Virus record (IMG/VR): IMGVR_UViG_3300043446_004613
Coordinates: 1 to 64,000 of that record
Reading direction: 5' to 3' (one strand)
DNA: 64,000 nucleotides
The notes below the pieces were generated by a model. That model had not been told where the DNA came from and ran no database searches. It was given only the letters and a program-made list of their open reading frames with translations. Numbering within the stretch: the first letter of the stretch is position 1; each line of letters opens with the position of its first letter. A program made the translations under genes and the position numbers. Below are positions 928-62,353 of the stretch, piece by piece.

Positions 928-933
928 TAGTTA
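928..933 (+). promoter_or_regulatory. TAGTTA putative late-promoter motif
   Basis: 4 nt upstream of GTG 938; lies within an 8-bp inverted repeat at 915-932 between divergent genes. Confidence 0.55.
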
Positions 934-937
934 AGGC

Positions 938-1282
938 GTGAGCGCGAATATCATCGTAAACCGGCTACTTGAAAGCGATCTCGACGCACCGTCACCGGAC
1001 GTTAGTCCAGCGGAATTGGTCGCACCGAACTATAGACCTAAGCCGCGATCCAACGTCAGCCGGTTTGCAGAACCTTACCTTGAATTGAACGGCAGACTTG
1101 GTGAAGGCAAAGGTTTGACGCTGTCGTCCTATCTGGGCACGCAGCTATCCTTCAGCACCATCGCGAGCTACGGTAAACAGTACAAACTAGCACTTCAGCG
1201 GGCGATGGATGATTACGTCAATACCGGTTTAGCCCGTCAAGGTCGCTCCAGTCGTGGCGGCGTAGCTTACTACCCTGTCTGA
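938..1282 (+). CDS. Putative head-packaged protein with LLE tag
   Basis: Starts MSANIIVNRLLE|SDLDAP; TAGTTA upstream. Confidence 0.6.
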   Translation: MSANIIVNRLLESDLDAPSPDVSPAELVAPNYRPKPRSNVSRFAEPYLELNGRLGEGKGLTLSSYLGTQLSFSTIASYGKQYKLALQRAMDDYVNTGLARQGRSSRGGVAYYPV

Positions 1283-1304
1283 GCTTCCACAGTTACGCTT
1301 CAAC

Positions 1305-1541
1305 TCATTTACGCCGACTGTAGCTGACGCGCATGCTTGTGATGTACGGACGGCTGATCTCCGGGTCAACGGTGTAGCCTTCCGCTTCAAGGCGAGCGCG
1401 AGCTTCGGCGATGGCGCTGGCCTCATCCTCGAACGGAACGTAGTCCTGCACCACCGGCCCGCAGTAGCCCATGCGGCTGCCGAACAGGGCGATCTTGCCG
1501 TCGCTGATGGCGATCTGGGCTTCTTTGATTTCAGTACTCAT
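1305..1541 (-). CDS. Hypothetical protein
   Basis: ORF track; fits minus-strand gene packing. Confidence 0.5.
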   Translation of the reverse strand: MSTEIKEAQIAISDGKIALFGSRMGYCGPVVQDYVPFEDEASAIAEARARLEAEGYTVDPEISRPYITSMRVSYSRRK

Positions 1542-1656
1542 ATAGGTAAGTGTTTACATTGTACCCACCACCCGGTCGGCTCTTGGGTTACCTGCGTGAA
1601 CCCGTCCAGCGCAGCTAAACGCTCCATCTTCTGTTTTTCGTCGTAGGGCGTAGGTA

Positions 1657-1896
1657 TCAGCTGGGACGGATTTTATCCTTGGACAGATTCATCTGAGCGG
1701 CCACAGCCTGTACGGCGGCGTTCAGTTTGTGCGGTGTGATCTTAGGGTTGCCGTCGTTAGCGACCTGACAGTAACAGAGCAAACTCATCCCGCTCAGCAT
1801 AGCGGCGATGATCTCGCTTCTATGTTCCGGCGCGATCGGCGCGGTGTTGGCGTATTTGTTTACAGCGTCCGTGATTTGTTGTTCAAGGCTATTCAT
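1657..1896 (-). CDS. Hypothetical protein
   Basis: ATG at 1896 overlaps the upstream stop (ATGA coupling). Confidence 0.5.
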   Translation of the reverse strand: MNSLEQQITDAVNKYANTAPIAPEHRSEIIAAMLSGMSLLCYCQVANDGNPKITPHKLNAAVQAVAAQMNLSKDKIRPS

Positions 1897-2321
1897 GCAA
1901 GGTAGGCGAGCGCGAGTGCGTTGCAAAGTAGGTGGAGAGTGTTGTCGGTAATGATCAGCAACCAGATGCGCATCCAGATCGGCTTGATGTCGGACTTCAG
2001 CTTAGGCTTACCTTCCCATACGGGACAGACTTCCTCGTCGTAATAGCCGGTCATGCGGCACTCGTTCCACGGATAGTAACCGTTCGGCCCGATATGGTTC
2101 TTGGCCCAGATGACGCAGCGGGCCAGCCCGAAGCGGTCGATCAGGAAATGCGTGCCGTAGATGGCGAGCAAAGCCCACACCGAGTGGGTAAGCAGGATGA
2201 ACGGTAACGTGTAACAGAGACAGTGGACAGCGCAGGCTAGCGTGCTGTTGCGCTTGTTGGCTGCCATCCAATCGGACTGAAGAATGTAATCTCCGACGAG
2301 GTGGGCGATGAGTTGGTTCAC
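1893..2321 (-). CDS. DUF3307-like membrane protein
   Basis: HLVGDYILQSDWMA..K, HCLCY, THFLID and DNTLH motifs. Confidence 0.8.
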   Translation of the reverse strand: MNQLIAHLVGDYILQSDWMAANKRNSTLACAVHCLCYTLPFILLTHSVWALLAIYGTHFLIDRFGLARCVIWAKNHIGPNGYYPWNECRMTGYYDEEVCPVWEGKPKLKSDIKPIWMRIWLLIITDNTLHLLCNALALAYLA

Positions 2322-2509
2322 GTGTTCTTAGGTTTAATCCACGGGTGGTCGGTGTATCTCCAGTTGGTCATTGTGCGCTTCAACGCGCCACAGTCTGGAC
2401 ACCAATACACAACAACTGTACCCATGCCTTCCATAGAACTGCCTACATCAACTTTGTTGGTATGCTTGCAGCTGGGTCGTTGCGTAGGCTTTTTGGTGAG
2501 ATCGCTCAT
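2318..2509 (-). CDS. Small Zn-ribbon-like protein
   Basis: CxH...WCPDCG; start chosen downstream of the promoter motif. Confidence 0.5.
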   Translation of the reverse strand: MSDLTKKPTQRPSCKHTNKVDVGSSMEGMGTVVVYWCPDCGALKRTMTNWRYTDHPWIKPKNT

Positions 2510-2527
2510 GACGTAATCAGACTGAAG

Positions 2528-2557
2528 TGTATACACTTTGGCTTCTGATCCGTCAAC
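2528..2557 (-). promoter_or_regulatory. Early sigma70-like promoter (GTTGAC...TGTATACA)
   Basis: Matches the motif recurring at about 10 operon heads. Confidence 0.6.
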
Positions 2558-2565
2558 AAATTATT

Positions 2566-3180: not shown

Positions 3181-3287
3181 TGCAGAAAAGCCAGCAGGAT
3201 CAAGAGCATGCCGATGCCCGCGCAAAGCAGAACGATGAGGATGCTCTGGCGGCGGGAGGGCCGGTTGTAGGAGCGTTCGTATTCCAT
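3168..3287 (-). CDS. 39-aa single-TM protein (not in ORF track)
   Basis: MEYERSYNRPSRRQSILIVLLCAGIGMLLILLAFLQCVI; TAGTTA 7 nt upstream. Confidence 0.5.
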   Translation of the reverse strand: MEYERSYNRPSRRQSILIVLLCAGIGMLLILLAFLQCVI

Positions 3288-3319
3288 GTTCTATTAACTA
3301 ACAGAACAGTATTTAGCGC

Positions 3320-4048
3320 ATGATCGTCGCTGTTGGAAACATGAATCGGGGAGTCGATCCCGTCCTGCTGCACCACTTCTACAAGCATTACACGGAGTGG
3401 GGCGTGAGTCGCTTTTACTGGGGTGTATACAGCGGTCGTGACAATCCTCACTGGGACTTGCTGGCTGACTGCTCAAAAGCGTACGACGCGGTGCTGATCC
3501 CGTGGATGGACGGTGTGTTCGAGAACAACAAGGACTTGGCTTTCTTCAACCATGTCCGGCAGCAGCTTGGCCCGGATGACTGGTACGTTCCGCACGACAC
3601 GGATGAGTTTGTCGTCGTACCGGGATACCGTAACTTAAACGACGTAGTAGCGGCTTGTGCCAAGGAGAGCGCGTCATGGGTCACCTCGGAACTGGTCGAC
3701 CGGATAACGATGAACGGTACGATCCCACCGGCTTTGACTATGGAGCCTTCCATCTGGCAGCAGTTCCCGCGCATCGGTACTGTGACCAAGCGGATTCAAC
3801 AATCGTGGACAGTCAAGGTAGCGCTGGCGCGATCAGACATTGCTGTCACCTCGGGTCACCATAAGATTGTCGGGAGCGCGATCCCGTTCAAAAAGACGGC
3901 GCAAACGCATCACTTCAAATGGTATGGTAACCTCTATGAACGCGAAGCGCAGAAGCTCTTGGGTTACGTCCAACAAAAGAAGCCGTGGATCACAGAGATC
4001 GCACGGCTTTTGACGTATATGAACTTGAACGATGGTCGCGTTACTTAG
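3320..4048 (+). CDS. Glycosyltransferase family 2-like (Glyco_tranf_2_4 type)
   Basis: HY..WGV..F, WYVPHDTDEF, GHH and HHFKW motifs. Confidence 0.75.
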   Translation: MIVAVGNMNRGVDPVLLHHFYKHYTEWGVSRFYWGVYSGRDNPHWDLLADCSKAYDAVLIPWMDGVFENNKDLAFFNHVRQQLGPDDWYVPHDTDEFVVVPGYRNLNDVVAACAKESASWVTSELVDRITMNGTIPPALTMEPSIWQQFPRIGTVTKRIQQSWTVKVALARSDIAVTSGHHKIVGSAIPFKKTAQTHHFKWYGNLYEREAQKLLGYVQQKKPWITEIARLLTYMNLNDGRVT

Positions 4049-12043: not shown

Positions 12044-12277
12044 ACGGCATTAAGAACAGATGTTGATGATAATGACGGCGATCAAAGAACCGACGGCGAA
12101 GAAAATGACCGTGGCAGCAAATTCAGCGATGGCGTTTGGATTTAGCACGGGGTTTACGTTTGGCGGCGGCAGCAAGAATCTCAACGTCACTCAGCACTTT
12201 ACGTTGTCGGGCGAGTTCATCGGCATCGATGCCGCAGAAGTGCATAATGACTTTGTCGTCTTTAGCGGATGTTTTAT

Positions 12278-13243: not shown

Positions 13244-13830
13244 TTTTGGTAAACAGTGTAAAGACAAGCTACACGTGGCACTAGGCACATCGATTTAGTC
13301 TCACTAGGCAACGGCTCAGTCCAGTTCTGACGGAGGATCAGATAGCCTTTCGGCACAAGATGCGTGGCCATGTCCTCGATAAAGTATATCCAGTCATCGG
13401 CTGTCCAGCCCTTACTGTAGACAATACGGATGGATGTAATCGCAGCGTAAGTCCCGTTCAGTTCCAGCGGTGTTTGGGCCTTAACGGCGGCGATCTGTGT
13501 ATCAGCTATGCCGCAAGTTTCGCGGATAATCTGGAATCGTGGATCAGGCACATCAACCCCGGTAACCGTGCAACCTTTTAGCTCGCGCAACAGCCATAGC
13601 GTATAACCGGGGCCGCAGCCGATGTCACATACACGGCTGCCGTCACGGATGAACTTGGCAAGGATTTGGTGATCTTTTAGGTATTCGTCGTAAATCGATG
13701 TCCTCCAAGCCGTAGGGTCTACCCACTTGTCTACAACGTAGTCTTGCTGCACATAGGCAGCCCGCGCTTTGGCAACAATAGACAGGAAGGCACAGCGTAT
13801 GTCGTGCGTCATGACTCTAACTAGCGACAC
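13234..13830 (-). CDS. Class I SAM-dependent methyltransferase
   Basis: VCDIGCGPG, VTGVD and L.PKGYL motifs. Confidence 0.85.
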   Translation of the reverse strand: MSLVRVMTHDIRCAFLSIVAKARAAYVQQDYVVDKWVDPTAWRTSIYDEYLKDHQILAKFIRDGSRVCDIGCGPGYTLWLLRELKGCTVTGVDVPDPRFQIIRETCGIADTQIAAVKAQTPLELNGTYAAITSIRIVYSKGWTADDWIYFIEDMATHLVPKGYLILRQNWTEPLPSETKSMCLVPRVACLYTVYQKCA

Positions 13831-15863: not shown

Positions 15864-15874
15864 GTTGGTAATAC

Positions 15875-15903
15875 TGTATACACTGTTGGTATTGTCGGTC
15901 AAC
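15875..15903 (-). promoter_or_regulatory. Early sigma70-like promoter
   Basis: AAAATTT..GTTGAC-N15-TGTATACAGT. Confidence 0.6.
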
Positions 15904-16622: not shown

Positions 16623-16684
16623 ACTATATTTTAACTAAATGCTTTACACGGCCAATCCACCAGCAGCACGCCAATCTTGAACTG

Positions 16685-16690
16685 TAGTTA
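16685..16690 (+). promoter_or_regulatory. TAGTTA putative late-promoter motif
   Basis: 7 nt upstream of ATG 16698. Confidence 0.55.
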
Positions 16691-17114: not shown

Positions 17115-17151
17115 GCCAAGTAGTTAGAGCGCAGTAACACCGCAAAACGCT

Positions 17152-19946: not shown

Positions 19947-20347
19947 AACCTAGATCAATCATATCCCGGATGCTTGAGGACGAAGAAGTCGATCGCTACG
20001 TCGACCAGTTGAAGTCCAGACCGAACATCAAGGATGTATTCGCAGCACTGGAAGCTGCGTTCGGTTTGGTAGACGGTTGGTGGCAGTACGTCAACGACCG
20101 CTGGCACGGCGGCCCGGTGCTAGTTGTGCTCGGAATCCCGACAACAAATACCGAAGACGTAAACGCTACGGCGATTGAGACACTGAGTCCGTTCGGTATT
20201 AAACCAGTAGACGTCTCGTATGACTTAGAGTTTGAGCAACTTTCCGTGTTTCTGCCGTTGGACAGTATCAACGCACCACCGCCAAAAACCAAAGAAGAGG
20301 CGGAAGAGGCTGACCTGTTCAGCGGTCGAGAGGAAGAAGGTAGTTAG
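19943..20347 (+). CDS. LLE-tagged protein
   Basis: MKPRSIISRMLE|DEEVDRYVD. Confidence 0.6.
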   Translation: MKPRSIISRMLEDEEVDRYVDQLKSRPNIKDVFAALEAAFGLVDGWWQYVNDRWHGGPVLVVLGIPTTNTEDVNATAIETLSPFGIKPVDVSYDLEFEQLSVFLPLDSINAPPPKTKEEAEEADLFSGREEEGS

Positions 20348-24252: not shown

Positions 24253-24567
24253 TTAATTACGGCTCCAGTTGTCACTGATACCCGGCATACGCTCTGTCAA
24301 TTTACCGGAACCAGCATCGGCAGCGGTGAGCACGGTGGCATTTGAAGCCGCAGCGTACTCGGTTGTGTAGCCCAGATGCTGGCAGACAATCGTGATGCGA
24401 TCATACATGTCATCCTTTGGGCCGCTGGTGCAGACCAGCTTTTTGTCGGTATGGTTTATCCGCCAGATGCTGCCGTTCATCGGGATGATCCAAGTCCCGC
24501 CGTTGTTGATGCGGGCGATATGCGAACGCGTCCATTCAATATCAGATGCGCGAGGTTTCCAGTTCAT
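24253..24567 (-). CDS. Hypothetical protein
   Basis: First gene after the promoter. Confidence 0.55.
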   Translation of the reverse strand: MNWKPRASDIEWTRSHIARINNGGTWIIPMNGSIWRINHTDKKLVCTSGPKDDMYDRITIVCQHLGYTTEYAAASNATVLTAADAGSGKLTERMPGISDNWSRN

Positions 24568-24575
24568 GTGGACAC

Positions 24576-24603
24576 TGTATACAGCATCGATTAGAGCGTC
24601 AAC
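24576..24603 (-). promoter_or_regulatory. Early sigma70-like promoter
   Basis: CATTTAGTAAAATTTTAGGTTGAC-N14-TGTATACAGT. Confidence 0.65.
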
Positions 24604-29052: not shown

Positions 29053-29066
29053 GTTCTAACTATCGT

Positions 29067-30015: not shown

Positions 30016-30023
30016 GGCCGTAA

Positions 30024-30050
30024 TGTACATACAAGCGTAATTCGGTCAAC
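30024..30050 (-). promoter_or_regulatory. Early sigma70-like promoter (variant)
   Basis: AAAATTTTAAGTTGAC...TGTATGTACATT. Confidence 0.5.
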
Positions 30051-30437: not shown

Positions 30438-30664
30438 TGAAGTGGCCGGAACCAGCCTCATACCAGCTGTTTGATGGTACGAACTGCGGGAATGTGCTCG
30501 TGATCCGTGGCCGGGTAGTTCATACTACCTGTGACGCGTTCAAGCGCTTTTTAGGGCGCAAGTTCGACGCGGTTCCGCTGGAATTCAAAGCGGGTAGTTA
30601 CAACGATGGCTGTCAATCCGAGCAATCTGAAGAAAAGCACGCCGATACCGGAAGACCCAACTGA
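30437..30664 (+). CDS. Hypothetical protein
   Basis: TAATG coupling with the upstream gene. Confidence 0.4.
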   Translation: MKWPEPASYQLFDGTNCGNVLVIRGRVVHTTCDAFKRFLGRKFDAVPLEFKAGSYNDGCQSEQSEEKHADTGRPN

Positions 30665-33503
30665 CATCTCACAAGATGCGTTGGATACGGTATTGGATCG
30701 CGTTACTACCGTATGCTACCCGAAAGGAACTCGGGTTCGTATCTCTTCAAAAGTCCCGTCGCAGCGTCTGCGCGGAAAGACCGGCACAGTTACCGGCGCA
30801 TCCCAAACCATGTGCTGGGTGGCTATCGACGATTTTGTCGCTGCTGGTGACCCCGATCCATTTTACTTCGTGGATTCAGACGTTGAGCCGCTGAACGAAG
30901 CAGAAACTACAGACGCTCCAGAGAACTATTTGCCGAGCAACGATTACATCAGCGTGCTGGGCAACCTCGGCTACAAGTTTAACGGCTGGCGCTGGGAGAA
31001 GCTGCTGCCTTTTGGCCCTGCCACGCTGTTCATTTCGGTCAAAGACAACAGCAGCGAACTGTTTGGTGCTCAGGCTTTCATCGATGTCCGCTACGTCAGA
31101 TACGGCGTGTGTGAACGGGTGCAGAGCATGAGCGTGGATGTCTACGACGTTGTAGACGTGTTGCGCCAGATCGAACAGTTTGCGCTCAGCGGTGATGTTC
31201 AGACCTTTACCGACAAGCTCAAGGCCGCCAAGTTTAGCGACATACCCGTGACGGAACCAAACCGGCTGTTGAATCTGTTTGGCGAGTCGATCATGGAAGC
31301 TATCGACCCGGATGACCCGGAGAGCTACATCGATACGCTAAAGCAGCACGAAAGCGTGATTGATGCTTTCGTGCAGAAGGGCTGCACACTAAGTCGGCGC
31401 ATGTCTGCCGACCGTCCGAGTTATGAACTAGGGCTGATCCACGAACCAGACAAGACAAAGCCTTGGGTCTATTACACCGTGGTGCTTGAACCTGACAGCC
31501 CGACACGGTGGAACGTTTATGCAGGCGGTTACCGAGAATACACTGACTCACCTGATGACACTTACAGTCAAGGTTTTGACATCGACGGCACATGTTCGAT
31601 TGATGTCACTGCCCCGCTTGAGCCGCAGGTAGCCTCAATTCTAGCTGAAATCACAAAGCACGACGGCGAACTCAAGGATCGCGCTGTAGACGAGTCCGCA
31701 CCAGATAATCTCGACGCCACACCGGAGACTATCCAGCACGTCGTTGATACGACAGTCCTGATTCCTGATGAGAGCGATCCAAGTTCAGAAGACTGTCGCG
31801 AGTGCAAGGAACACGGCGGTGCGCCGGAAGGTGACAGACCATTCAAAGGTGATAACCTGTGCTGGGATTGTTACCGGCATCTGTATCCTGAGCCTGATGC
31901 AGAAGATGACGCCGTAGTTGAGAGTACTGAAACATGCCCTGATTGTGCCGGATCGGACGGTCGGCAAATCAATGGTACGTGGTACGTCAGCAGTCCTTGT
32001 GATGACTGCGGTGGTAGCGGCTTTGATGCGTCTGTCGATGGAGAATGTGCCCACTGTAAAGGTGTAGGTGAGCTACCCTGCTGTCGCTGTGAAGGTACAG
32101 GCAGCATAGCAGAATCAGTCGAGAAAGACCCCGACGTTGTAGATTACACGACGTACGCAGATAGCACACCCGACTTCAACTTTGTCCAGCTGATTGATCC
32201 GCAGAAAGTGCGCAAGCTGCTGCTCTCTTTTGGTTACCGGGCCGTCAACCTATCGCGCAGTCCGCGCACAACCGGTCTATGTGGGAGCGCGATCCCGAGG
32301 ACGCAAGAACGCCAGCAGGCGCTACAACGTGAAGAGCATCACGAAGAAGCGTACTTTCGCCATCACCTTGAACAAGGGTTGTTGAAACTTTACCCCAATC
32401 AGGCCGAGGAAGTATACAAGCCATTTGTCGGTAACATCTACAAGCTGTACCACAGTGTCATCATACATGTCTGGTGCATGGCGGAAAAACAGGCGATCTA
32501 CTTCGACATCCTGCCGGTCGACTCCAACATCTGGAAAAAAGGTAAGCGCACGCTTCCGTCTGATGACGTAAGTCGCTACGTGCGTGAAACTGAATCGGAG
32601 GACGATCCGCAGACTTACGTCGATGCCGCTAAACCGAACGTATACACTCTCTACGGACAAGTGGAGAACTACGACGCGCCGGTTGCACTGGGCGTGTTTA
32701 CCAGCTTACAGGCTGCGGTCGACCGTGCTCGCGAGCGGGATGCCTACGCAGAATTCGCTACCGTATGGGCGGACGAAGAGGTCATCAACTCGCTTGAAGA
32801 CTGGGATAAGCCGACCGTAAAAGCGGTACGCTACAGCGGCGTCAAGTACCTCATCACTCCAAACTGGCAAGTGATCCGCTCAGAAACACCTGACCGTATC
32901 ATCAGCGGTGTGCGCTACAGCAATCCTCCCGTGCAGGAAAGTGCAGACGATAACGTTGATCTCGACGCAGAGCAGTACGTTCAAACCACGGCAAATATAG
33001 ATGAATTCCTATCTGGCCTAGGCTGGTCACGGGATGCCGGATCATCGTACTACCGCAAACGGTTCCAGCTGCCTACCATTTACCGACTCGGTGGCCTTGT
33101 TTTTACAGCTATTGAGTTCATTCTAGCTGTTGATCTGGAAAACGATCTGGCTGCACCGTGGTTGACCCTCTACTTTGACAACGAGCAGGGGAATAATCTC
33201 ATGTCGCGTTCGTGGCGACTTCCGATGCAGGAAGTGAAGGGTGAAACTGAAGACGATGAGGATTGGTTAAACCGTGATGTCACGCTTCGGCGCTTCGCAC
33301 ACGCGCTTCCAAGTGTCATCGCTAACGTTGACTGGCCGCGTACGAATAAGCGGCTTGCCCGCGAGATCGAACAGGACATCCAGCCAACCGCAGCTGTCAT
33401 GGGACGTCACCTTACGCTTAAAGCCAGCAGCCGCGTGGAGCAGGCTGTGCAAGAACTAATCGATTGCCTCAGCCACAAGGCAAAAACACTCTACGGTACT
33501 TAG
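30606..33503 (+). CDS. 965-aa modular polyprotein (KOW/SH3-like, Zn-finger and DnaJ-CXXCXGXG cassettes)
   Basis: Seven [VIL]-x-E linkers; TAGTTA at 30595-30600. Confidence 0.75.
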   Translation: MAVNPSNLKKSTPIPEDPTDISQDALDTVLDRVTTVCYPKGTRVRISSKVPSQRLRGKTGTVTGASQTMCWVAIDDFVAAGDPDPFYFVDSDVEPLNEAETTDAPENYLPSNDYISVLGNLGYKFNGWRWEKLLPFGPATLFISVKDNSSELFGAQAFIDVRYVRYGVCERVQSMSVDVYDVVDVLRQIEQFALSGDVQTFTDKLKAAKFSDIPVTEPNRLLNLFGESIMEAIDPDDPESYIDTLKQHESVIDAFVQKGCTLSRRMSADRPSYELGLIHEPDKTKPWVYYTVVLEPDSPTRWNVYAGGYREYTDSPDDTYSQGFDIDGTCSIDVTAPLEPQVASILAEITKHDGELKDRAVDESAPDNLDATPETIQHVVDTTVLIPDESDPSSEDCRECKEHGGAPEGDRPFKGDNLCWDCYRHLYPEPDAEDDAVVESTETCPDCAGSDGRQINGTWYVSSPCDDCGGSGFDASVDGECAHCKGVGELPCCRCEGTGSIAESVEKDPDVVDYTTYADSTPDFNFVQLIDPQKVRKLLLSFGYRAVNLSRSPRTTGLCGSAIPRTQERQQALQREEHHEEAYFRHHLEQGLLKLYPNQAEEVYKPFVGNIYKLYHSVIIHVWCMAEKQAIYFDILPVDSNIWKKGKRTLPSDDVSRYVRETESEDDPQTYVDAAKPNVYTLYGQVENYDAPVALGVFTSLQAAVDRARERDAYAEFATVWADEEVINSLEDWDKPTVKAVRYSGVKYLITPNWQVIRSETPDRIISGVRYSNPPVQESADDNVDLDAEQYVQTTANIDEFLSGLGWSRDAGSSYYRKRFQLPTIYRLGGLVFTAIEFILAVDLENDLAAPWLTLYFDNEQGNNLMSRSWRLPMQEVKGETEDDEDWLNRDVTLRRFAHALPSVIANVDWPRTNKRLAREIEQDIQPTAAVMGRHLTLKASSRVEQAVQELIDCLSHKAKTLYGT

Positions 33504-38423: not shown

Positions 38424-38441
38424 TAAGTACCTACGTAGTTA
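38424..38441. promoter_or_regulatory. Back-to-back TACTTA(-)/TAGTTA(+) motifs
   Basis: 4 and 7 nt upstream of the divergent starts at 38419 and 38449. Confidence 0.6.
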
Positions 38442-40486: not shown

Positions 40487-40827
40487 GTCAGCAAGTCGGT
40501 ATCGGCACTGAACTGAACAGTACGGTTCACTTTGCCTTTAACCTCTGGGCCGGGAACCACAGAGAGCTTTCGAGCCGATAGTCCGTGAAGCTCCAGCAAT
40601 GCTTCGATTTCAGCCTTTGCTTTCAAGTACGTGGTGTTGTTGTGGATCACTTTGAAGTGTACAAGCTGACCCTGCGGGCGCGGCCACGCTGTTCCATACT
40701 GATCATGGAGATCGATGATAAAATCCGCTAGGTTGGCTTCTTGTAAAATCACAGCATAACTACGGCCATGTTGGAGGCTACGGCGTATTTTGGCTGCGAG
40801 AGGTCGATCTTTAGGTCGACTAGCCAA
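40483..40827 (-). CDS. Hypothetical protein
   Basis: ORF track. Confidence 0.45.
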   Translation of the reverse strand: MASRPKDRPLAAKIRRSLQHGRSYAVILQEANLADFIIDLHDQYGTAWPRPQGQLVHFKVIHNNTTYLKAKAEIEALLELHGLSARKLSVVPGPEVKGKVNRTVQFSADTDLLT

Positions 40828-48754: not shown

Positions 48755-48767
48755 ACGCTTTAACTAC

Positions 48768-52711: not shown

Positions 52712-52783
52712 ACAGGTCTATAGAACAGAATATCGCGGTTACTTTGGGCCATCAACAGCGAAGACCCTCACAGTAGTTACAGC

Positions 52784-53035
52784 GTGAACGCGACACCGCT
52801 TGATATGTTCAGAACCAAACCCGCCGTTGATACGGAGGATTTGGCCTTGTCGTTCATTGAGGAAGAAGTCGGACGTTTCGACTGGGTCAACAACTGGCCT
52901 AAGATAAAGGAGTCAGGTAATGCCCGCTGGCGCGTGCAGAACTGGCTGGACGCCTTGGGAGTCGAACACAGCGCCGACGAGATTGTTTCCTACTTGGATA
53001 AGCTCGTGGCCGAGCGGACAGGTCGTTGGCTCTGA
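52784..53035 (+). CDS. Hypothetical protein
   Basis: TAGTTA at 52774-52779. Confidence 0.55.
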   Translation: MNATPLDMFRTKPAVDTEDLALSFIEEEVGRFDWVNNWPKIKESGNARWRVQNWLDALGVEHSADEIVSYLDKLVAERTGRWL

Positions 53036-55691: not shown

Positions 55692-55706
55692 GCAGTAACT
55701 ACTGAT

Positions 55707-56165
55707 ATGATTGATAGTTCCACGTTTGATGCTCGGTTGAATACCTGCCGGGCCTGTGAATTTTGGCGCGGGGTATGCGTAAAAGGGCACGCTTTGCGGG
55801 GCGACCTAGGCTGTCCCGACAAGAAGTTTGAGGGCATAAATGGTGCCGGTTACGTAGTAAGCCTGCCTTTTGCAGAACGGCAGCTACCGGCAGTAAGCGC
55901 GTCAGGCTGCTGCGGTTCGGTAGCGGAGCAGGAGATAAAACCAATGTCGTGGCGACAGGTTTGGGATCATTTTACAGCGTCGATGAAGACGTGGTCAGCT
56001 TCTGGGTTTGAGCTTGCCGACAATAGCTTGTATCTGCACCGCTTGAGCGTTTGCCACAACTGTCCTAAAAGCCAGTACCAGTGGTATCAATGTCGTCAGT
56101 GTAAATGCCTTGTTTACACAAAAACAAAGTTGAGTACAGAAAGCTGCCCGCTTGGTTTCTGGTAG
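55707..56165 (+). CDS. Cys-rich protein with two metal-binding modules (DUF6171-like)
   Basis: R...C..C...C..C.C....K......CP...W. Confidence 0.65.
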   Translation: MIDSSTFDARLNTCRACEFWRGVCVKGHALRGDLGCPDKKFEGINGAGYVVSLPFAERQLPAVSASGCCGSVAEQEIKPMSWRQVWDHFTASMKTWSASGFELADNSLYLHRLSVCHNCPKSQYQWYQCRQCKCLVYTKTKLSTESCPLGFW

Positions 56166-56173
56166 TTAAAAGC

Positions 56174-56533
56174 ATGAAGTTTTACACATTTGCTGCTGTC
56201 ATCGCCGCGCTCGTTGTAGCGGCCATCTATTCCCACAACTGGGACTTGGCTATCAGCATCGTAACGCCAGTCATCGTTACGTCTATCGCGAAATACATCC
56301 CAAAACTTCCTAAATGGGCGCTTCCCGTGAGCACGCCGCTGATCGGAATGGTGCTCGGTATCGTGCTGGATAAGCTCGGAGCAGCTAGTCTCAGCTGGTT
56401 CGATACCGCCAAAGCTGGTGCGCTGGCGGTTTTTATACGTGAATCTTGGAACCAAGCTGTCACAAAGCAGATGGCTGAGCCTGACGCGCCTGCCCAAGTT
56501 CCCACCGTCACTTCGTCAGGTAGCAACGGCTGA
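56174..56533 (+). CDS. Multi-TM membrane protein, holin-like
   Basis: 3-4 hydrophobic segments; TAGTTA at 56163-56168. Confidence 0.55.
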   Translation: MKFYTFAAVIAALVVAAIYSHNWDLAISIVTPVIVTSIAKYIPKLPKWALPVSTPLIGMVLGIVLDKLGAASLSWFDTAKAGALAVFIRESWNQAVTKQMAEPDAPAQVPTVTSSGSNG

Positions 56534-57891: not shown

Positions 57892-58137
57892 TTACTTAAA
57901 ATCTTGAAACACGTAGCGGGTTTTTACTTCAGTGACCTCACTGGTTGCGTACCCGACGACACAGTTCACGGTAGGCTTTGTTAAAAAACCAAAACCGACG
58001 ACAGTCGTTTTTGTATTCACTACGTCGTACTGATTCGTTTTAATATCCGTCCAGCCGATGCCGACGATAGGCAGGCAGCGCTTGGAGGCGCACCCGCATA
58101 TAAGCAGGGATGCAGCACATATCAAAATCAGTCTCAC
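57892..58137 (-). CDS. Lipoprotein
   Basis: ICGC lipobox; TACTTA upstream. Confidence 0.6.
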   Translation of the reverse strand: MRLILICAASLLICGCASKRCLPIVGIGWTDIKTNQYDVVNTKTTVVGFGFLTKPTVNCVVGYATSEVTEVKTRYVFQDFK

Positions 58138-58141
58138 AACC

Positions 58142-58156
58142 TAAGTACGGTAGTTA
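58142..58156. promoter_or_regulatory. Back-to-back TACTTA(-)/TAGTTA(+) motifs
   Basis: 4 and 5 nt from the divergent starts. Confidence 0.6.
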
Positions 58157-58161
58157 TCTCG

Positions 58162-58578
58162 ATGAAACGCGTGTACACAGACAATCGGATGCCCGGTGTT
58201 GAGATCGTGAACCACGGAAAGGCCGTGTTTGAGGTCTATAAAGACAACCGACTCCACTCAGCTTTTGACTCGTATGAGCGCCCAGACGGCACGGTAACCG
58301 AAGAGTTTGCTTTCCGCCGTGCGACCAAATGGTTTGACCGTGTCTGTGAAACCGGCGAATTCAAGCGTGTTCAGATTCCAGACGATCTGGATCATACGGA
58401 TATTCTCAACTCAGCTGAGAAGGCTACTTCTCGTCAGATTGACGCGCTCATGGCGCAGGAAAAAGCTGAAACCGATCCCAACCGGAAAAGTCAGCTGCGG
58501 AAACGCTTATTGCAGATGATGGCGCAAGAAGAGTCATTGGCTGAATCCGTCGTCAGCCATCTACTCGAAGAGCGCTGA
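58162..58578 (+). CDS. Protein with C-terminal LLE tag
   Basis: Ends LAE|SVVSHLLEER. Confidence 0.6.
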   Translation: MKRVYTDNRMPGVEIVNHGKAVFEVYKDNRLHSAFDSYERPDGTVTEEFAFRRATKWFDRVCETGEFKRVQIPDDLDHTDILNSAEKATSRQIDALMAQEKAETDPNRKSQLRKRLLQMMAQEESLAESVVSHLLEER

Positions 58579-58777
58579 GTTTTTCAAGAAACGCGGCATA
58601 CGCACTGGCAGGTATAATAACGGAACTGCGTGTTCCACCGGTAAACTCGGTGATCCTAATAAAGCGTCCGCGATGATTTTCTTTAAGCGCGAACGTTAGC
58701 GTCTTGCGGTCAACCACAAGCTCCAGCACTTCCAAAGTGTGCTCTTGAGCGCTGTATTTATGCTGTTTACTCGACAT
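58553..58777 (-). CDS. PUR-family (DUF3276-like) ssDNA/RNA-binding protein
   Basis: RKT..F.LKEN.RGRF.RITE..GG.R..IIPA. Confidence 0.8.
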   Translation of the reverse strand: MSSKQHKYSAQEHTLEVLELVVDRKTLTFALKENHRGRFIRITEFTGGTRSSVIIPASAYAAFLEKLSALRVDG

Positions 58778-58796
58778 AAGATAAATACACCAAAAC

Positions 58797-59926: not shown

Positions 59927-60333
59927 TGCGGTTCTTGTGGTTTATACAGGCGAGTCACAGTCCAGTTCTCTGGGCTGCTCCACATATATGTCCACGAACT
60001 CGCGCCAACATAACTACCGTTGCTGTCGTAACCGGTCACGCTGACCAGCGTTTTGTCGTAACACGGTTCCAGCGAAAAGTGCGGCATGCTGTACAATCCG
60101 TACTGATTATACCCGTAAGCCGGGCCAGACGGAAAATAGCTGTTACTGTTTTTGACCACCATAACACAGCCATTCGTCAGATCGCACACGTAGTCGCCAT
60201 TTTGGTAGACTTTAAGCGTGTAACCGCTGTTGTTTACCAGCGTCGACTTTGGCAGTTCCAGCACGGTAGACGTATACTTGAATGAAGCGCATCCAGTCAG
60301 CAGGACAAGCGGCAGTAGCAGTAGTGTTTTCAC
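59923..60333 (-). CDS. Lipoprotein
   Basis: GTG start MKTLLLLPLVLLTGC. Confidence 0.65.
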   Translation of the reverse strand: MKTLLLLPLVLLTGCASFKYTSTVLELPKSTLVNNSGYTLKVYQNGDYVCDLTNGCVMVVKNSNSYFPSGPAYGYNQYGLYSMPHFSLEPCYDKTLVSVTGYDSNGSYVGASSWTYMWSSPENWTVTRLYKPQEPQ

Positions 60334-60530
60334 CGACGAACCTTTCCAGTGCCTTGGCACATGTCGCACGTATGCGGCGTGTCGCCGTAGCGTGCCATGA
60401 CCTCAGTAGAATAACGGCCTTCTCCGGCGCACTGAGGGCAGCGCCGACGGAAGGGCCAGCCGGTTAGTTCCCACATGACCCACATGCGGAACCGGTCGCG
60501 TAAATTTGAGATGGTGTAGCTGATGTTCAA
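60330..60530 (-). CDS. Small DnaJ-type Zn-finger protein
   Basis: CPQCAGEG and CDMCQGTG. Confidence 0.6.
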   Translation of the reverse strand: MNISYTISNLRDRFRMWVMWELTGWPFRRRCPQCAGEGRYSTEVMARYGDTPHTCDMCQGTGKVRR

Positions 60531-60979
60531 GAATGGTGTTTATGCTCGATGTCGACCACGGCCCCAGCTAAGCGCTGCGACTTTGCAGCCAGCCGGATGC
60601 GCCGGTCTGCCGCCGCGATTGCCCGACGTTCGCGACTGACTTTGAGTTTTTCTTTGCGTTCACGCGCACGCTCAAGCTGGGCACGCAGAGCGCGGTTACG
60701 GAGTCCCCATGCGTAGATGTCCTTCAGATTTAAGCGTACTTCTTGCCGCGTGCCTTTGGGGTAAAGCACCAGCTGGTCAACGGCGACAAGACCGACAACA
60801 AGTTTGCGGTGTTTATCACGGCCATACTGGCCTCCGAGCGTGTCGCGGGTTTGACGCCAGACATCGCTGGTAGCGACTTTGGTTTCAGGAGAGCCTTCAG
60901 CCGTGCGTTTGATGGTAAGTTTGCCGTTCGGGCCTTTGACCCGGACAGCGATAATTTTGGTTTTGCCGATCTCAATCAT
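60527..60979 (-). CDS. Hypothetical basic protein
   Basis: Start placed after the early promoter. Confidence 0.55.
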   Translation of the reverse strand: MIEIGKTKIIAVRVKGPNGKLTIKRTAEGSPETKVATSDVWRQTRDTLGGQYGRDKHRKLVVGLVAVDQLVLYPKGTRQEVRLNLKDIYAWGLRNRALRAQLERARERKEKLKVSRERRAIAAADRRIRLAAKSQRLAGAVVDIEHKHHS

Positions 60980-60988
60980 GCCGCATAG

Positions 60989-61016
60989 TGTATACAGCGG
61001 CATATAACGAGTCAAC
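60989..61016 (-). promoter_or_regulatory. Early sigma70-like promoter
   Basis: AAATTTTGGTGTTGAC-N14-TGTATACACT. Confidence 0.65.
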
Positions 61017-61024
61017 ACCAAAAT

Positions 61025-61321
61025 TTAATTATCCTCAAGCAGCACAGCAACAATCGACTGGGCGGACTCGCGCATGGACTTTTCACCACGACACTTCCAC
61101 TTCTTACGGGAAAGTGCGTTGGGGCTGTTGGGATCGTTGCGCCAGTTGCCCTTGATGTGTGCGGAGCGTGCGCAGTAGGCGTCACCCTTGCTCGTGCCGG
61201 GACGGATGCGGTCGCCGCCGTCCTTGGCCTTACCAGCCTGTCCGTAGCGGACAGTCTTAGTGCGACCTGTTTCCGGGTTTTTGACGACTTTCTTAAAACG
61301 TTTTTTGACGGTGTCAGCCAT
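61025..61321 (-). CDS. DUF6321-like basic protein with C-terminal LLE tag
   Basis: KTVRYGQAG...YCARS...SRKKWKC; ends MRE|SAQSIVAVLLEDN; TAGTTA upstream. Confidence 0.65.
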   Translation of the reverse strand: MADTVKKRFKKVVKNPETGRTKTVRYGQAGKAKDGGDRIRPGTSKGDAYCARSAHIKGNWRNDPNSPNALSRKKWKCRGEKSMRESAQSIVAVLLEDN

Positions 61322-61327
61322 AGCGCT

Positions 61328-62155
61328 CTAACTACGTATGGCCGATAATATTTTAATCACCCGGTCGATAATGTCCGCATCACCCGAGGTGGCGTAATCA
61401 TCTGCGTAGAGGACGTCGCAGATACGGTTATAGGCTGCCGTGGTCAGGCGACGCTCACCGTTTCGAGCAGGATATTCCGGCGAATTGGTGTAGTACTCCA
61501 GTTCGCGCAGGCGCTCGGCAATACGGCCCAGTCCGGCGACAGCATCGTCACGTCGATCGAGCGTGGATTGCCGACTTAAACGGCGCAGCTTTCGGGCAAT
61601 GACTTTCAAAAGCTGGATTATTTCCTGCCGAGCTTCGGCGTTATTCAGCGCTATTGCGTTCCAGCTTTCCGCGTTTCTTTTGGCTACGGAATCAGCAAAG
61701 TCACTTACGTAGTTCTCAGCGTCCACTTCATCTTCCAACAAGGTATTAGCCAATGACTCGACGTTGAAACGTTTACGTATGCCAGAAACGTGCTCCTGCT
61801 CTTTGGCAATCTCCATATCGCGACGCTCCGCGTATTTTTGGGCTAAGCGCTGGATAGCGGTTTTTATCGTAGCCTGTATACCGGCGGGCAGCTTGGCGGC
61901 ATGCAGCTTGCCGCCGATAAGACCGACGAAAGCTTCGTAAGCTTGCTCCGGCTCCAGTTCAAGGATGCGTTCAACAGTGGCCGGTTTAACTTCGACCTGC
62001 TTGCTTCCGAGATAGTTGTACAGCGCCTGTAGCACATTATCCGGGCGATCATCACGATCCAGCGCCTGTTTGAGCGCAAGGTACTGTGGCGTCCAAATAC
62101 CTGTTGGATTTGTCGGGCCGGACAAATCGCTAAAATTGGCAGCAAAAGCTTTCAT
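61328..62155 (-). CDS. Two-cassette LLE-tagged protein
   Basis: NVE|SLANTLLE|DEVDAENYVSD; TAGTTA at 62162-62167. Confidence 0.65.
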   Translation of the reverse strand: MKAFAANFSDLSGPTNPTGIWTPQYLALKQALDRDDRPDNVLQALYNYLGSKQVEVKPATVERILELEPEQAYEAFVGLIGGKLHAAKLPAGIQATIKTAIQRLAQKYAERRDMEIAKEQEHVSGIRKRFNVESLANTLLEDEVDAENYVSDFADSVAKRNAESWNAIALNNAEARQEIIQLLKVIARKLRRLSRQSTLDRRDDAVAGLGRIAERLRELEYYTNSPEYPARNGERRLTTAAYNRICDVLYADDYATSGDADIIDRVIKILSAIRS

Positions 62156-62164
62156 CTGGTGTAA

Positions 62165-62353
62165 CTACCAGTTCAGCGCATCTTCGTACTTGCGCATCAA
62201 CTGCTCGATATAGCCGCGTTCATCGTCAGTGTAATGCTCCTTGTCGAGGCTTTTAGCTATAAATTGCTGTTCAGATTCGGTCAACTCAAGCTCTGAGTCG
62301 GAGAGCTTTATCAAAAAGTTGCCGCGAATCTGGTCGGTGTCGTAGTAGCTCAT
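62165..62353 (-). CDS. Hypothetical protein
   Basis: Operon packing. Confidence 0.55.
   Translation of the reverse strand: MSYYDTDQIRGNFLIKLSDSELELTESEQQFIAKSLDKEHYTDDERGYIEQLMRKYEDALNW

What the first reader, a model, noticed from the sequence alone, without database searches (positions are those of the whole stretch)
928..62167. TA(G/C/T)TTA motif 4-9 nt upstream of virion and tagged genes: putative late promoter making leaderless mRNAs
Seen: TAGTTA at 928(+), 3295(-), 16685(+), 17121(+, 25 nt upstream), 20341(+), 29057(-), 30595(+), 38436(+), 48761(-), 52774(+), 55696(-), 56163(+), 58151(+), 61329(-) and 62162(-); TACTTA at 33497(+), 38424(-) and 58142(-); TATTTA at 3310(+) and 58782(-). 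There is no obvious Shine-Dalgarno. The motif marks structural, lysis-like and LLE-tagged genes and is not found at this spacing before early-promoter operon heads, which independently supports the packaged-cargo model. Inference: a single-element late promoter analogous to, but different from, T4 TATAAATA, placing the transcription start at or near the start codon.
Basis: partly seen in the sequence, partly recalled or inferred. Interest (0 to 1): 0.65.

Follow-up and report, generated by a model that had tools for sequence, protein, structure and literature searches.

The report
Start-codon-abutting late promoter of jumbo phage
A 7-base signal, G-TA-n-TTA, sits 4-9 bases before the start codons of virion genes in an uncultured freshwater T4-like giant phage and its relatives. 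It is most likely a late promoter read by a phage-encoded sigma factor, and it would make messenger RNAs with almost no leader.

Summary
All 20 listed sites exist. In the window, 16 of 19 TAGTTA copies lie 4-9 nt before an ORF-opening ATG or GTG, against a 7.2% background (P=4e-16). TAGTTA is the top-scoring hexamer of all 4096.

The window belongs to a 211-kb distant T4-superfamily phage from a freshwater metagenome. Genome-wide, 41 of 58 copies behave the same way. TAGTTA is also the top hexamer in three related contigs with 49-61% GC, and it is kept upstream of orthologous genes while the flanks diverge.

The consensus is G-TA-N-TTA followed by RRR-Y-R, with nothing conserved further upstream. 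It precedes baseplate, portal, sheath, neck and tail-fibre genes.

The phage has no RNA polymerase of its own that I could detect. It does have one divergent sigma factor, which matches T4 gp55 and sigma region 2 in both fold and profile searches.

Its sigma70-type early promoters sit exactly 6 nt before ATG. A second motif, GTTCT(T/A)A, sits before replication genes in the same register. Shine-Dalgarno sequences are rare everywhere in the genome.

Best reading: a single-element late promoter that yields leaderless or 1-5-nt-leader mRNAs. No RNA data exist, so the transcription start is inferred. I rate it a new variant of a known kind.

The parts
928..933 (+). Class A motif G-TAGTTA, 4 nt before GTG 938 (ORF 938-1282, N-terminal NRLLE tag)
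3295..3300 (-). TAGTTA (T, not G, precedes), 7 nt before ATG 3287; the ORF is only 39 aa, so this is a weaker case
3310..3315 (+). Variant G-TATTTA, 4 nt before ATG 3320 (ORF 3320-4048); back to back with 3295-
13818..13823 (-).
16685..16690 (+). G-TAGTTA, 7 nt before ATG 16698 (ORF 16698-17114); head of a divergent unit
17121..17126 (+). G-TAGTTA-GAGC-G, 25 nt before ATG 17152. It keeps the RRGC-R downstream signature, so it is probably a promoter with a 21-nt SD-less leader
20341..20346 (+). G-TAGTTA, 9 nt before ATG 20356 (ORF 20356-21003); the upstream ORF's TAG stop overlaps the motif's 3' end
24254..24259 (-).
29057..29062 (-). TAGTTA, 4 nt before ATG 29052 (ORF 28741-29052, N-terminal KLVE tag)
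30595..30600 (+). G-TAGTTA, 5 nt before ATG 30606 (965-aa ORF 30606-33503)
33497..33502 (+). Variant G-TACTTA, 4 nt before ATG 33507 (ORF 33507-34220); overlaps the TAG stop of the 965-aa ORF
38424..38429 (-). Variant G-TACTTA, 4 nt before GTG 38419 (657-aa ORF 36446-38419, NRILE tag); divergent partner of 38436+ in a 29-nt intergenic region
38436..38441 (+). G-TAGTTA, 7 nt before ATG 38449 (ORF 38449-39003, SNLLE tag)
40757..40762 (-).
48761..48766 (-). G-TAGTTA, 6 nt before ATG 48754; the ORF 48431-48754 is a homologue of T4 baseplate wedge gp53
52774..52779 (+). G-TAGTTA, 4 nt before GTG 52784 (ORF 52784-53035); divergent head
55696..55701 (-). G-TAGTTA, 4 nt before GTG 55691 (ORF 54435-55691, DLLLE tag); the longest-ORF start at 55790 is probably wrong
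56163..56168 (+). G-TAGTTA, 5 nt before ATG 56174 (ORF 56174-56533, hydrophobic N-terminus)
58142..58147 (-). Variant G-TACTTA, 4 nt before GTG 58137 (ORF 57892-58137); back to back with 58151+ in a 24-nt gap
58151..58156 (+). G-TAGTTA, 5 nt before ATG 58162 (ORF 58162-58578)
58782..58787 (-). Variant G-TATTTA, 4 nt before ATG 58777 (ORF 58553-58777)
61329..61334 (-). G-TAGTTA, 7 nt before ATG 61321 (ORF 61025-61321)
62162..62167 (-). G-TAGTTA, 6 nt before ATG 62155 (ORF 61328-62155)
24574..24602 (-). Early sigma70-type promoter: AT-rich UP element, TTGACG, 17 nt, TACAGT, then 6 nt and ATG 24567. This is the internal calibrator for leaderless geometry
30022..30049 (-). Early promoter: TTGACC, 16 nt, TACATT, then 6 nt and ATG 30015
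60987..61015 (-). Early promoter: TTGACT, 17 nt, TACACT, then 7 nt and ATG 60979
15873..15902 (-). Early promoter: TTGACC, 18 nt, TACAGT, then 9 nt and ATG 15863
12051..12057 (-). Class B motif GTTCTTA, 7 nt before ATG 12043. This second start-abutting motif class precedes replication genes elsewhere in the genome
14293..14299 (-). Class B motif GTTCTAA, 6 nt before ATG 14286
16632..16637 (-). TAGTTA copy not next to a start (T precedes); lies in the AT-rich upstream part of an early-like promoter
60011..60016 (-). G-TAGTTA copy with no start codon within 30 nt; the only unexplained full 7-mer in the window

Best explanation
G-TA-N-TTA (most often GTAGTTA, followed by RRR-Y-R) is the -10-type core of the late promoters of this phage. 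The phage is a distant member of the T4 superfamily.

Proposed mechanism: host core RNA polymerase carries the phage's own divergent sigma factor (P0001, 336 aa, genome 114960-115970 minus strand, outside the window). The sigma's region-2 domain recognises this single element, and no -35 element is needed. Transcription starts at about the fifth base after the motif.

The start codon lies 4-9 nt after the motif. The mRNAs would therefore begin with AUG or GUG at spacing 4 (about 40% of sites), or carry a leader of only 1-5 nt with no Shine-Dalgarno sequence. They would be translated by a leaderless-type route.

Shown here: the motif, its position, its gene class, its conservation in relatives, the sigma-like fold, the lack of a detectable phage RNA polymerase, and the identical geometry of the early promoters.

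Inferred: that P0001 is the protein that reads this motif, the exact transcription start, and the mode of translation.
For: 1. Position. 41/58 copies genome-wide and 16/19 in the window lie just upstream of ORF starts; TAGTTA ranks first of 4096 hexamers.
2. Replication in relatives. TAGTTA is again the top hexamer in related contigs G001, G002 and G003 (13/18, 16/25, 19/31; GC 58, 61 and 49%). GTAGTTA is strongly strand-biased there.
3. Orthologous upstream regions keep the motif while flanks and spacer diverge. TATTTA or TACTTA in one genome aligns with TAGTTA in another.
4. Gene class. The motif precedes homologues of T4 gp53, gp13 and sheath, and baseplate wedge, portal and tail fibre. DNA polymerase, primase, gp41, gp47 and UvsW carry GTTCT(T/A)A instead.
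5. Context. A start-abutting motif of any class precedes 33/52 divergent heads but only 3/66 genes whose start overlaps the upstream gene. Back-to-back motifs fill 24-29-nt divergent gaps.
6. There is no conservation from -55 to -2, as at T4 late promoters (PMC2988020).
7. Start-site signature. Pyrimidine at +4 (75%) and purine at +5 (83%) appear even at sites where the start codon is at least 6 nt away. GTG starts are 22/40 at spacing 4 but 5/53 at larger spacings. Only 4/104 sites have a spacing below 4.
8. Calibrator. Canonical early promoters in the five genomes place the -10 hexamer exactly 6 nt before ATG in 18 cases.
9. Sigma. P0001 hits the gp55 family phrog_234 at E=8e-5. Its model aligns to sigmaE region 2 bound to -10 DNA (4lup_A, Z 11.5, rmsd 2.2 A over 91 residues) and to T4 gp55 (7d7c_F, Z 10.9, rmsd 3.3 A over 120 residues). 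All top fold hits are sigma factors.
10. No T7-type or multisubunit RNA polymerase domains were found.
11. Copies away from starts are depleted: 15 observed against about 35 TAGTTA copies expected in total.
Against: - No transcript 5' ends are available. Only DNA runs of one freshwater sample hold this sequence.
- The sigma assignment rests on weak sequence evidence and on the fold of a helical domain. Pfam Sigma70_r2 does not detect P0001, and hhalign against a single gp55 sequence fails.
- Nothing ties P0001 to motif A rather than to motif B.
- With spacing 4, the element would lie at -10 to -5. That is 1-2 nt closer to +1 than a canonical -10 hexamer or T4's TATAAATA.
- Leaderless GUG starts are poorly used in E. 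coli; the host is unknown.
- The major capsid protein and prohead protease genes have no motif of their own.
- One motif-bearing gene is a radical-SAM enzyme, not an obvious virion protein.
Confidence: 0.65

Rival explanations
1. The motif acts in the mRNA as a non-Shine-Dalgarno translation-initiation signal. It would be a ribosome- or factor-binding site for late messages that are transcribed from promoters further upstream.
For: - It lies where a ribosome-binding site would lie, and SD sequences are nearly absent from the genome.
- About half of the sites sit in 1-30-nt gaps inside co-directional gene strings.
- A few sites lie 15-25 nt from the start.
Against: - It is specific to a temporal and functional gene class, and a different motif serves replication genes.
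- It is nearly absent from translationally coupled genes (3/66).
- In divergent gaps of 24-29 nt, no other promoter-like element is available for either gene.
- The Y-R signature is anchored to the motif, not to the start codon, and GTG is enriched only at spacing 4.
- The canonical early promoters occupy the same place.
- Copies outside start regions are depleted.
Confidence: 0.12
2. The motif is the DNA binding site of a late activator or repressor. It would overlap the core promoter, while host sigma70 or another factor supplies promoter recognition.
For: - The related class B motif often occurs as a palindrome (GTTCTAAGAAC at genome 68975 and 168812), as operators do.
- Some A sites form the palindrome TAACTACGTAGTTA (genome 87557/87565 and 103662/103670).
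- P0001 has a weak Mor-like helix-turn-helix in its C-terminal part.
Against: - Most A sites are single and asymmetric, with a strict orientation relative to the gene.
- No sigma70-type -10 or -35 accompanies them.
- The palindromic A cases are explained by divergent gene pairs.
Confidence: 0.1
3. The motif is an RNA-processing site. A phage or host endoribonuclease would cut polycistronic late transcripts there, producing short-leader mRNAs.
For: - Its position just upstream of many internal genes of co-directional strings.
- There is a precedent of sequence-specific phage endoribonucleases, such as T4 RegB (from my own knowledge, not tested here).
Against: - It occurs at divergent heads, where no upstream same-strand transcript is expected.
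- It does not explain the sigma-like protein, the class specificity or the parallel with the early promoters.
Confidence: 0.06
4. Chance or a compositional artefact. For example, TAG and TAA stop codons of upstream genes could pile up before start codons.
For: The motif contains TAG and, with a following A or G, TAA or TAG in a second frame. Several upstream ORFs do end inside it (for example 20341+ and 33497+).
Against: - The 59 permutations of the same letters show 6.8% association against 71% for TAGTTA.
- The non-stop positions G-1, T5 and T6 are conserved.
- The motif is present at divergent heads that have no upstream ORF.
- The result is replicated in three other genomes.
Confidence: 0.01

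Closest known systems
T4 late promoters (TATAAATA) read by gp55 with gp33 and the gp45 sliding clamp
   Same: - A single short element about one helical turn from the start site, with no -35 element (PMC2988020).
- It is placed before virion genes.
- The phage belongs to the T4 superfamily: Gp23, Portal_T4, Peptidase_S77 and gp25 families are present.
- It has a phage-encoded sigma region-2 protein that aligns structurally with gp55.
   Different: - The sequence is G-TA-N-TTA, not TATAAATA.
- It lies 4-9 nt from the start codon. In T4 (tested on T4 DNA here) TATAAATA lies 14-32 nt away, with an SD sequence in between.
- The sigma is 336 aa with extra C-terminal helical domains, against 185 aa for gp55.
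- No gp45-type clamp was found.
- The replicative polymerase gene matches phrog_17, annotated only as 'DNA polymerase'; its polymerase family was not determined here. The weak DNA_pol_A hit belongs to a different protein, encoded inside the window.
'-10 region adjacent to ORF' leaderless expression in Deinococcus-Thermus and Actinobacteria
   Same: - A promoter -10 element lies 6-7 bp before the ORF and no SD is present (PMC12340547; PMC3160421). ATG- or GTG-initiated leaderless mRNAs are translated in mycobacteria (PMC4633059).
- This phage's early -10 hexamers (TACAGT, TACACT) resemble the commonest Deinococcus form, TACACT, and show the same 6-nt spacing.
   Different: - Here the pattern is in a phage and in three promoter classes.
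- Two of those classes (G-TA-N-TTA and GTTCTWA) are not TANNNT elements.
- The late element sits about 2 nt closer to the start codon.
Short start-site-proximal late promoters of phiKZ and AR9 jumbo phages (non-virion RNA polymerase)
   Same: A jumbo phage with a short late-promoter motif close to the transcription start and no -35 element.
   Different: - Those phages encode their own multisubunit RNA polymerases; none was detected here.
- No leaderless phiKZ transcript was detected in an early-infection dRNA-seq study (PMC8244752).
- AR9 5' UTRs are 26-491 nt long (PMC5312081).
Lambda cI mRNA from PRM (classic phage leaderless mRNA)
   Same: The transcript begins with the start codon, so a 5'-terminal AUG is used for initiation (10.1101/2023.09.02.556006).
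   Different: That is a single gene under a host sigma70 promoter. Here there are dozens of transcription-unit heads in all temporal classes.

Membership tests
T4-type late transcription system (gp55/gp33/gp45 + TATAAATA) | A gp55-family sigma (region-2-only protein of about 185 aa) | tested here: inconclusive
   P0001 hits phrog_234 at E=8e-5 over profile positions 60-155. Its model aligns to gp55 chain 7d7c_F with Z 10.9, rmsd 3.3 A over 120 residues. However, it is 336 aa with extra domains, and hhalign against the T4 gp55 sequence finds nothing.
T4-type late transcription system (gp55/gp33/gp45 + TATAAATA) | An 8-bp TATAAATA promoter element | tested here: not met
   The consensus is G-TA-N-TTA.
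T4-type late transcription system (gp55/gp33/gp45 + TATAAATA) | No -35 or other upstream element | tested here: met
   Information content is at most 0.15 bit at every position from -55 to -2 in 94 pooled sites.
T4-type late transcription system (gp55/gp33/gp45 + TATAAATA) | A gp45 sliding clamp and the gp33 co-activator | tested here: not met
   phrog_223 (gp45) gives no hit in the genome at E<=1. gp33 was not searched for. The record is 93% complete, so absence is not proven.
T4-type late transcription system (gp55/gp33/gp45 + TATAAATA) | Drives virion (late) genes | tested here: met
   It lies before homologues of gp53, gp13, sheath, baseplate wedge, portal and tail fibre. Timing of expression was not tested.
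Sigma70-family sigma factor | Region 2 fold that binds the -10 element | tested here: met
   Model residues 19-120 align to sigmaE region 2 bound to -10 DNA (4lup_A): Z 11.5, rmsd 2.2 A, 91 of 91 residues. All top Foldseek and VIA rows are sigma factors. Caveat: Z below about 13 is less secure for helical domains.
Sigma70-family sigma factor | Sequence match to Pfam Sigma70_r2 or r4 | tested here: not met
   PF04542 gives no hit in the genome. The only Pfam hit on P0001 is a sub-threshold Mor helix-turn-helix at E=0.0013.
Leaderless mRNA genes | The transcription start coincides with the first base of the start codon | not testable with these tools
   No RNA run holds the sequence. The start is inferred only from geometry.
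Leaderless mRNA genes | A promoter -10 element about 6-7 nt upstream of the start codon, with no SD | tested here: met
   Early promoters have a 6-nt spacing in 18 cases across five genomes. Class A sites are spaced 4-9 nt. An SD core is present in 1/84 motif-bearing genes.

The most novel reading that the evidence does not exclude
This would be a whole uncultured clade of 200-245-kb T4-superfamily phages that runs its entire gene-expression programme on leaderless or near-leaderless mRNAs. More than 290 homologues of the sigma protein are found in metagenomes.

The early, replication and late classes would each use a different promoter element fused to the start codon, and SD-dependent initiation would be dispensed with. 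The late class would be read by a new three-domain relative of gp55 that recognises G-TA-N-TTA without a sliding clamp. The phage's own initiator-type tRNA (and perhaps its tmRNA) would support this mode of translation.
Probability: 0.4. Interest if true: 0.78.

Novelty: new variant of a known kind. Interest (0 to 1): 0.62.

Why it matters
T4 is the textbook case for late transcription and for SD-led phage translation. This distant relative appears to keep the logic: one short element, a phage sigma and no -35. But it has a different consensus, apparently no clamp, and promoters fused to start codons.

If confirmed, the finding would give four things:
- A new sigma and promoter pair for studying how region-2-type sigmas read DNA.
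- The first phage lineage, to my knowledge, in which leaderless mRNAs are the rule across all temporal classes.
- A practical rule for annotating gene starts and temporal classes in an abundant group of uncultured freshwater jumbo phages. Several longest-ORF starts in the window are corrected by the motif.
- A hint about the translation habits of the unknown host.

Tried and rejected
**RNA evidence.** The look-up of sequencing runs returned only two DNA runs of one freshwater sample, which is probably the source. I therefore did not use read laying, because contigs of DNA runs cannot show RNA 5' ends.

**Close annotated relatives.**
- Megablast of 20 kb against the phage collection found nothing.
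- The major capsid protein is less than 30% identical to any cultured phage.
- tblastn of the sigma protein against cultured phages found nothing.

**Phage RNA polymerases and extra sigmas.**
- No T7-type polymerase (PF00940) and no beta or beta' domains (PF00562, PF00623) were found. The PF00940 control rang nowhere, so that particular negative is weak.
- There was no hit for phrog_12791 or Pfam Sigma70_r2.
- A profile of the P0001 family finds no paralogue in six-frame ORFs.

**Sequence-level link of P0001 to solved structures or to gp55.** phmmer and hmmsearch against PDB found nothing. hhalign against T4 gp55 found nothing. Only the PHROG profile and the fold comparison support the link.

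**Host identification.**
- A search for close relatives of the phage HU-like protein in genomes found none.
- The anticodon arm of the phage initiator-type tRNA matches 108 genomes from many phyla, which is uninformative.

**Terminator test.** My first terminator scan was far too permissive. The stricter scan found clean hairpin plus T-run terminators directly abutting only class B motifs (genome 105316+, 174638-), none abutting class A.

**Not tested.** From memory, GUAGUUA may be complementary to a segment of 16S rRNA helix 18. I could not test this without the host, and a 7-mer match in a 1.5-kb rRNA is expected by chance in roughly one case in ten.

**Not needed.** No alternative genetic code was needed.

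Full report
**What the window is**

The window is the first 64 kb of a 211,113-bp virus record (93% complete by CheckV, 52% GC). Only two DNA runs of one freshwater metagenome sample hold it, and no RNA run does. It has no near relative among cultured phages.

Family scans of its proteins show a distant member of the T4 superfamily:
- Pfam Gp23 (major capsid), Portal_T4, Peptidase_S77 (prohead protease) and GPW_gp25.
- PHROG tail sheath, UvsX-like recombinase, SbcC- and SbcD-like nuclease subunits, primase and helicases.

The major capsid protein is under 30% identical to that of any cultured phage. Most large proteins encoded in the window have no PHROG hit.

**The observation**

- Of the 19 TAGTTA copies in the window, 16 lie 4-9 nt upstream of an ATG or GTG that opens an ORF.
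- One copy (17121+) lies 25 nt upstream, and two (16632-, 60011-) are not next to a start.
- The three TACTTA and two TATTTA sites are each 4 nt from a start. A TAATTA at 24254- behaves the same way.

In the window TAGTTA scores 16/19 against a background of 7.2% for all hexamers (P=3.9e-16) and ranks first of 4096. GTAGTTA occurs 15 times against 5.07 +/- 2.09 expected from dinucleotide-preserving shuffles.

In the whole genome, 41 of 58 copies are followed within 3-10 nt by an ORF start. The figure is 6.9% for all hexamers and 6.8% for the 59 permutations of the same letters (P=1e-34). Copies away from starts are depleted: 15 remain, against about 35 TAGTTA copies expected in total.

**Anatomy of the motif**

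I pooled 104 start-associated sites from this genome and four related contigs.
- A G precedes the hexamer in 86% of sites.
- The four bases after it are R-R-R-Y, followed by a purine.
- Nothing is conserved from -55 to -2.

A scan of natural single-base variants shows which positions matter:
- T2, A3, T6 and A7 of GTAGTTA are required.
- T5 is strongly preferred.
- Position 4 accepts any base. The fractions with a start 3-10 nt downstream are G 83/114, A 13/20, C 8/15 and T 21/36.

The spacing to the start codon is 4 nt (40 sites), 5 (18), 6 (13), 7 (12), 8 (4) and 9 (6). Only 4 sites are below 4.

The pyrimidine-purine step at +4/+5 is also present at sites where the start codon is 6 or more nt away (75% and 83%). 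It is therefore anchored to the motif, not to the start codon. GTG is the start codon at 22 of 40 spacing-4 sites but at only 5 of 53 sites with larger spacing. Both facts are what one expects if RNA polymerase starts at the fifth base after the motif. That base is the first base of the start codon at spacing 4.

**Which genes carry it**

Local phmmer against T4 proteins and PHROG scans place the motif before homologues of:
- baseplate wedge gp53 (window 48431-48754),
- neck protein gp13,
- tail sheath (15 nt away),
- a gp6-type baseplate wedge subunit,
- the portal,
- a tail fibre protein.

A second motif, yGTTCT(T/A)A, lies in the same register, 5-8 nt from the start. It precedes DNA polymerase, primase, the gp41 helicase, the gp47 nuclease subunit, UvsW and a GroES-like protein.

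The capsid protein and prohead protease genes have no motif of their own and lie inside a longer string.

**Context**

I counted start-abutting motifs of any class by gene context:
- 33 of 52 heads of divergent gene pairs,
- 29 of 63 genes separated from the upstream gene by 1-30 nt,
- 3 of 66 genes whose start overlaps the upstream gene.

Divergent pairs separated by only 24-29 nt (38424-/38436+ and 58142-/58151+ in the window, 87557-/87565+ elsewhere) consist of little more than two motifs back to back. For class B, two clean intrinsic terminators run directly into the motif and the ATG (genome 105316+, 174638-). A transcript for the downstream gene must then begin within about 13 nt of its start codon. 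I found no such case for class A.

**An internal calibrator**

The phage also has canonical sigma70-type early promoters. They consist of an AT-rich upstream element, TTGACN, 16-18 nt, then TAC(A/G)NT. In the five genomes, the -10 hexamer is followed by exactly 6 nt and then ATG in 18 cases, by 7 nt in 5, by 8 nt in 5 and by 9 nt in 2.

Six bases between the -10 hexamer and +1 is the standard geometry of such promoters (established knowledge). These early transcripts should therefore begin with AUG. Four such promoters lie in the window (15902-, 24602-, 30049-, 61015-). Placing the promoter against the start codon is thus the general habit of this clade, and the late motif occupies the place that a -10 element occupies at early genes.

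By contrast, on T4 DNA fetched here TATAAATA lies 14-32 nt from the ATG, with a Shine-Dalgarno sequence in between.

SD cores are rare throughout this genome: 1/84 motif-bearing genes, 17/155 others and 4.6% of random ATGs. The absence of SD supports SD-independent translation in general. It is not evidence that is specific to the late genes.

**Relatives**

Homologues of the sigma-like protein (62-73% identical) lie on IMG/VR contigs of 34-129 kb with 49-61% GC.
- GTAGTTA is over-represented and strongly strand-biased in all of them, for example 18 forward against 2 reverse, with 3 and 1 for the reversed control.
- In the three longest contigs TAGTTA is again the top hexamer just upstream of ORF starts (13/18, 16/25, 19/31; P from 4e-10 to 3e-15). 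GTTCTA and GTTCTT follow.
- Upstream of orthologous genes the motif is kept while flanks and spacer length change.
- TATTTA or TACTTA in this genome corresponds to TAGTTA in orthologous positions, for example upstream of genes at genome 157345, 93759 and 69003.

**Who reads it**

- No T7-type or multisubunit RNA polymerase domain is detectable. The early promoters imply use of the host enzyme.
- The gp55 family profile phrog_234 hits one ORF, genome 114960-115970 on the minus strand (P0001, 336 aa), at E=8e-5.
- Its family has more than 290 members in metagenomes, on contigs of up to 245 kb. One member is labelled as a sigma-24 family protein by its source.
- No cultured phage has it.
- An AlphaFold model built on 36 homologues has mean pLDDT 77.
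- Every top Foldseek row is a sigma factor.
- The N-terminal domain aligns to sigmaE region 2 bound to its -10 element (4lup_A: Z 11.5, rmsd 2.2 A, 91 residues) and to T4 gp55 in the late open complex (7d7c_F: Z 10.9, rmsd 3.3 A, 120 residues).
- Sequence-only links fail, and helical folds give middling Z scores easily. I therefore treat 'sigma factor' as well supported and 'gp55 orthologue' as open.
- The gene lies in a string headed by class B-like motifs, which fits a cascade from early to replication class to late.
- No paralogue exists, and no gp45-type clamp was found.
- That P0001 reads motif A rather than motif B is an inference.

**Mechanism proposed**

Host core polymerase plus P0001 recognises G-TA-N-TTA as a sole, -10-type element and starts at about the fifth base downstream. 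The products are mRNAs that begin with AUG or GUG or carry a 1-5-nt leader. These would be translated without an SD. A few sites (sheath gene, 17121+) would give leaders of 11-21 nt.

The rivals are:
- an mRNA-level translation signal (0.12),
- an operator for a late regulator (0.10),
- an RNA-processing site (0.06),
- a compositional artefact (0.01).

Each is weighed in its own section of this report. The decisive missing datum is the position and chemistry of the RNA 5' ends.

**Comparison with what is known**

The system works like T4 late transcription (PMC2988020). It fails two defining features of that family, the TATAAATA sequence and the clamp, and its sigma is larger.

The promoter-against-ORF arrangement is known in Deinococcus-Thermus and Actinobacteria (PMC12340547, PMC3160421, PMC4633059). 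The early -10 hexamers here (TACAGT, TACACT) even resemble the commonest Deinococcus form. I could not identify the host, though.

Jumbo phages with their own polymerases differ. No leaderless phiKZ transcript was detected in an early-infection dRNA-seq study, and AR9 5' UTRs are 26-491 nt long (PMC8244752, PMC5312081).

I found no paper in the library that describes this motif or a T4-like phage with start-codon-abutting promoters. That is an absence in a limited library, not proof of novelty.

**Verdict**

- I rate the feature a new variant of a known kind and of moderate to high interest.

Noticed in passing
window 12051-12057(-), 14293-14299(-), 47509-47515(-); genome 97398+, 98474+, 105657+, 169882+, 174625-, 176365-, 185315+: A second start-abutting motif, yGTTCT(T/A)A, lies 5-8 nt before ATG. 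It precedes DNA polymerase, primase, gp41, gp47, UvsW and GroES-like genes and is conserved in relatives. It is sometimes palindromic (GTTCTAAGAAC at genome 68975 and 168812). It is probably the replication-class (middle) promoter or an operator; its reader is unknown.
   Followed up: partly
window 15873-15902(-), 24574-24602(-), 30022-30049(-), 60987-61015(-); about 30 more in five genomes: Early sigma70-type promoters have an AT-rich UP element (TAAAATTTTATG), TTGACN, 16-18 nt and TAC(A/G)NT. The ATG lies exactly 6 nt after the -10 hexamer in 18 cases, which predicts truly leaderless early mRNAs.
   Followed up: yes
genome 99969-100045(+) = L004:15969-16045; genome 100235-100652(+) = L004:16235-16652: A phage-encoded initiator-type tRNA-Met (C1 opposite A72; acceptor and T arms look, from memory, much like E. 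coli tRNA-fMet; two of the three anticodon-stem G:C pairs) starts 5 nt after the -10 hexamer of an early promoter. A full-length tmRNA follows it (Rfam RF00023, 127.5 bits, E=4e-51). An own initiator tRNA may be linked to leaderless translation.
   Followed up: partly
window ORFs 938-1282(+), 28741-29052(-), 36446-38419(-), 38449-39003(+), 54435-55691(-): Products of several motif-bearing genes share an N-terminal tag of the form ..(I/L)xN(R/L)(L/I)(L/V)E.. at residues about 8-14. Examples are MSANIIVNRLLESD, MTGRILANRILESADDD and MNANILVDLLLELN. This recalls T4 capsid-targeting sequences cut by the prohead protease after LxE (from my own knowledge).
   Followed up: partly
whole genome: Shine-Dalgarno cores are almost absent: 18 of 239 genes against 4.6% of random ATGs. 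No SD-like k-mer is enriched upstream of starts. The host probably does not rely on SD pairing.
   Followed up: yes
window 13812, 40752, 55691, 56174 (starts set by the motif) against longest-ORF starts 13830, 40827, 55790, 56105: The motif suggests that the longest-ORF start is wrong for several genes. The tag alignment of 54435-55691 supports the motif-defined start.
   Followed up: partly
window 1-462(+): The ORF at the very start of the record has a weak, sub-threshold match to the Gp23 capsid family (E=7e-4, 19.5 bits). It may be a fragment or a vertex-protein-like paralogue at the contig end.
   Followed up: no
genome about 130,700-130,745: A strong bidirectional intrinsic terminator (CCCCGCAGGAAACTGCGGGG flanked by T and A runs) lies directly after the major capsid gene. 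An early-type promoter (130857+) follows it, 6 nt before ATG 130891.
   Followed up: no
window 60011-60017(-): This is the one full GTAGTTA copy in the window with no start codon within 30 nt. It could be an internal or antisense promoter, or a chance copy.
   Followed up: no
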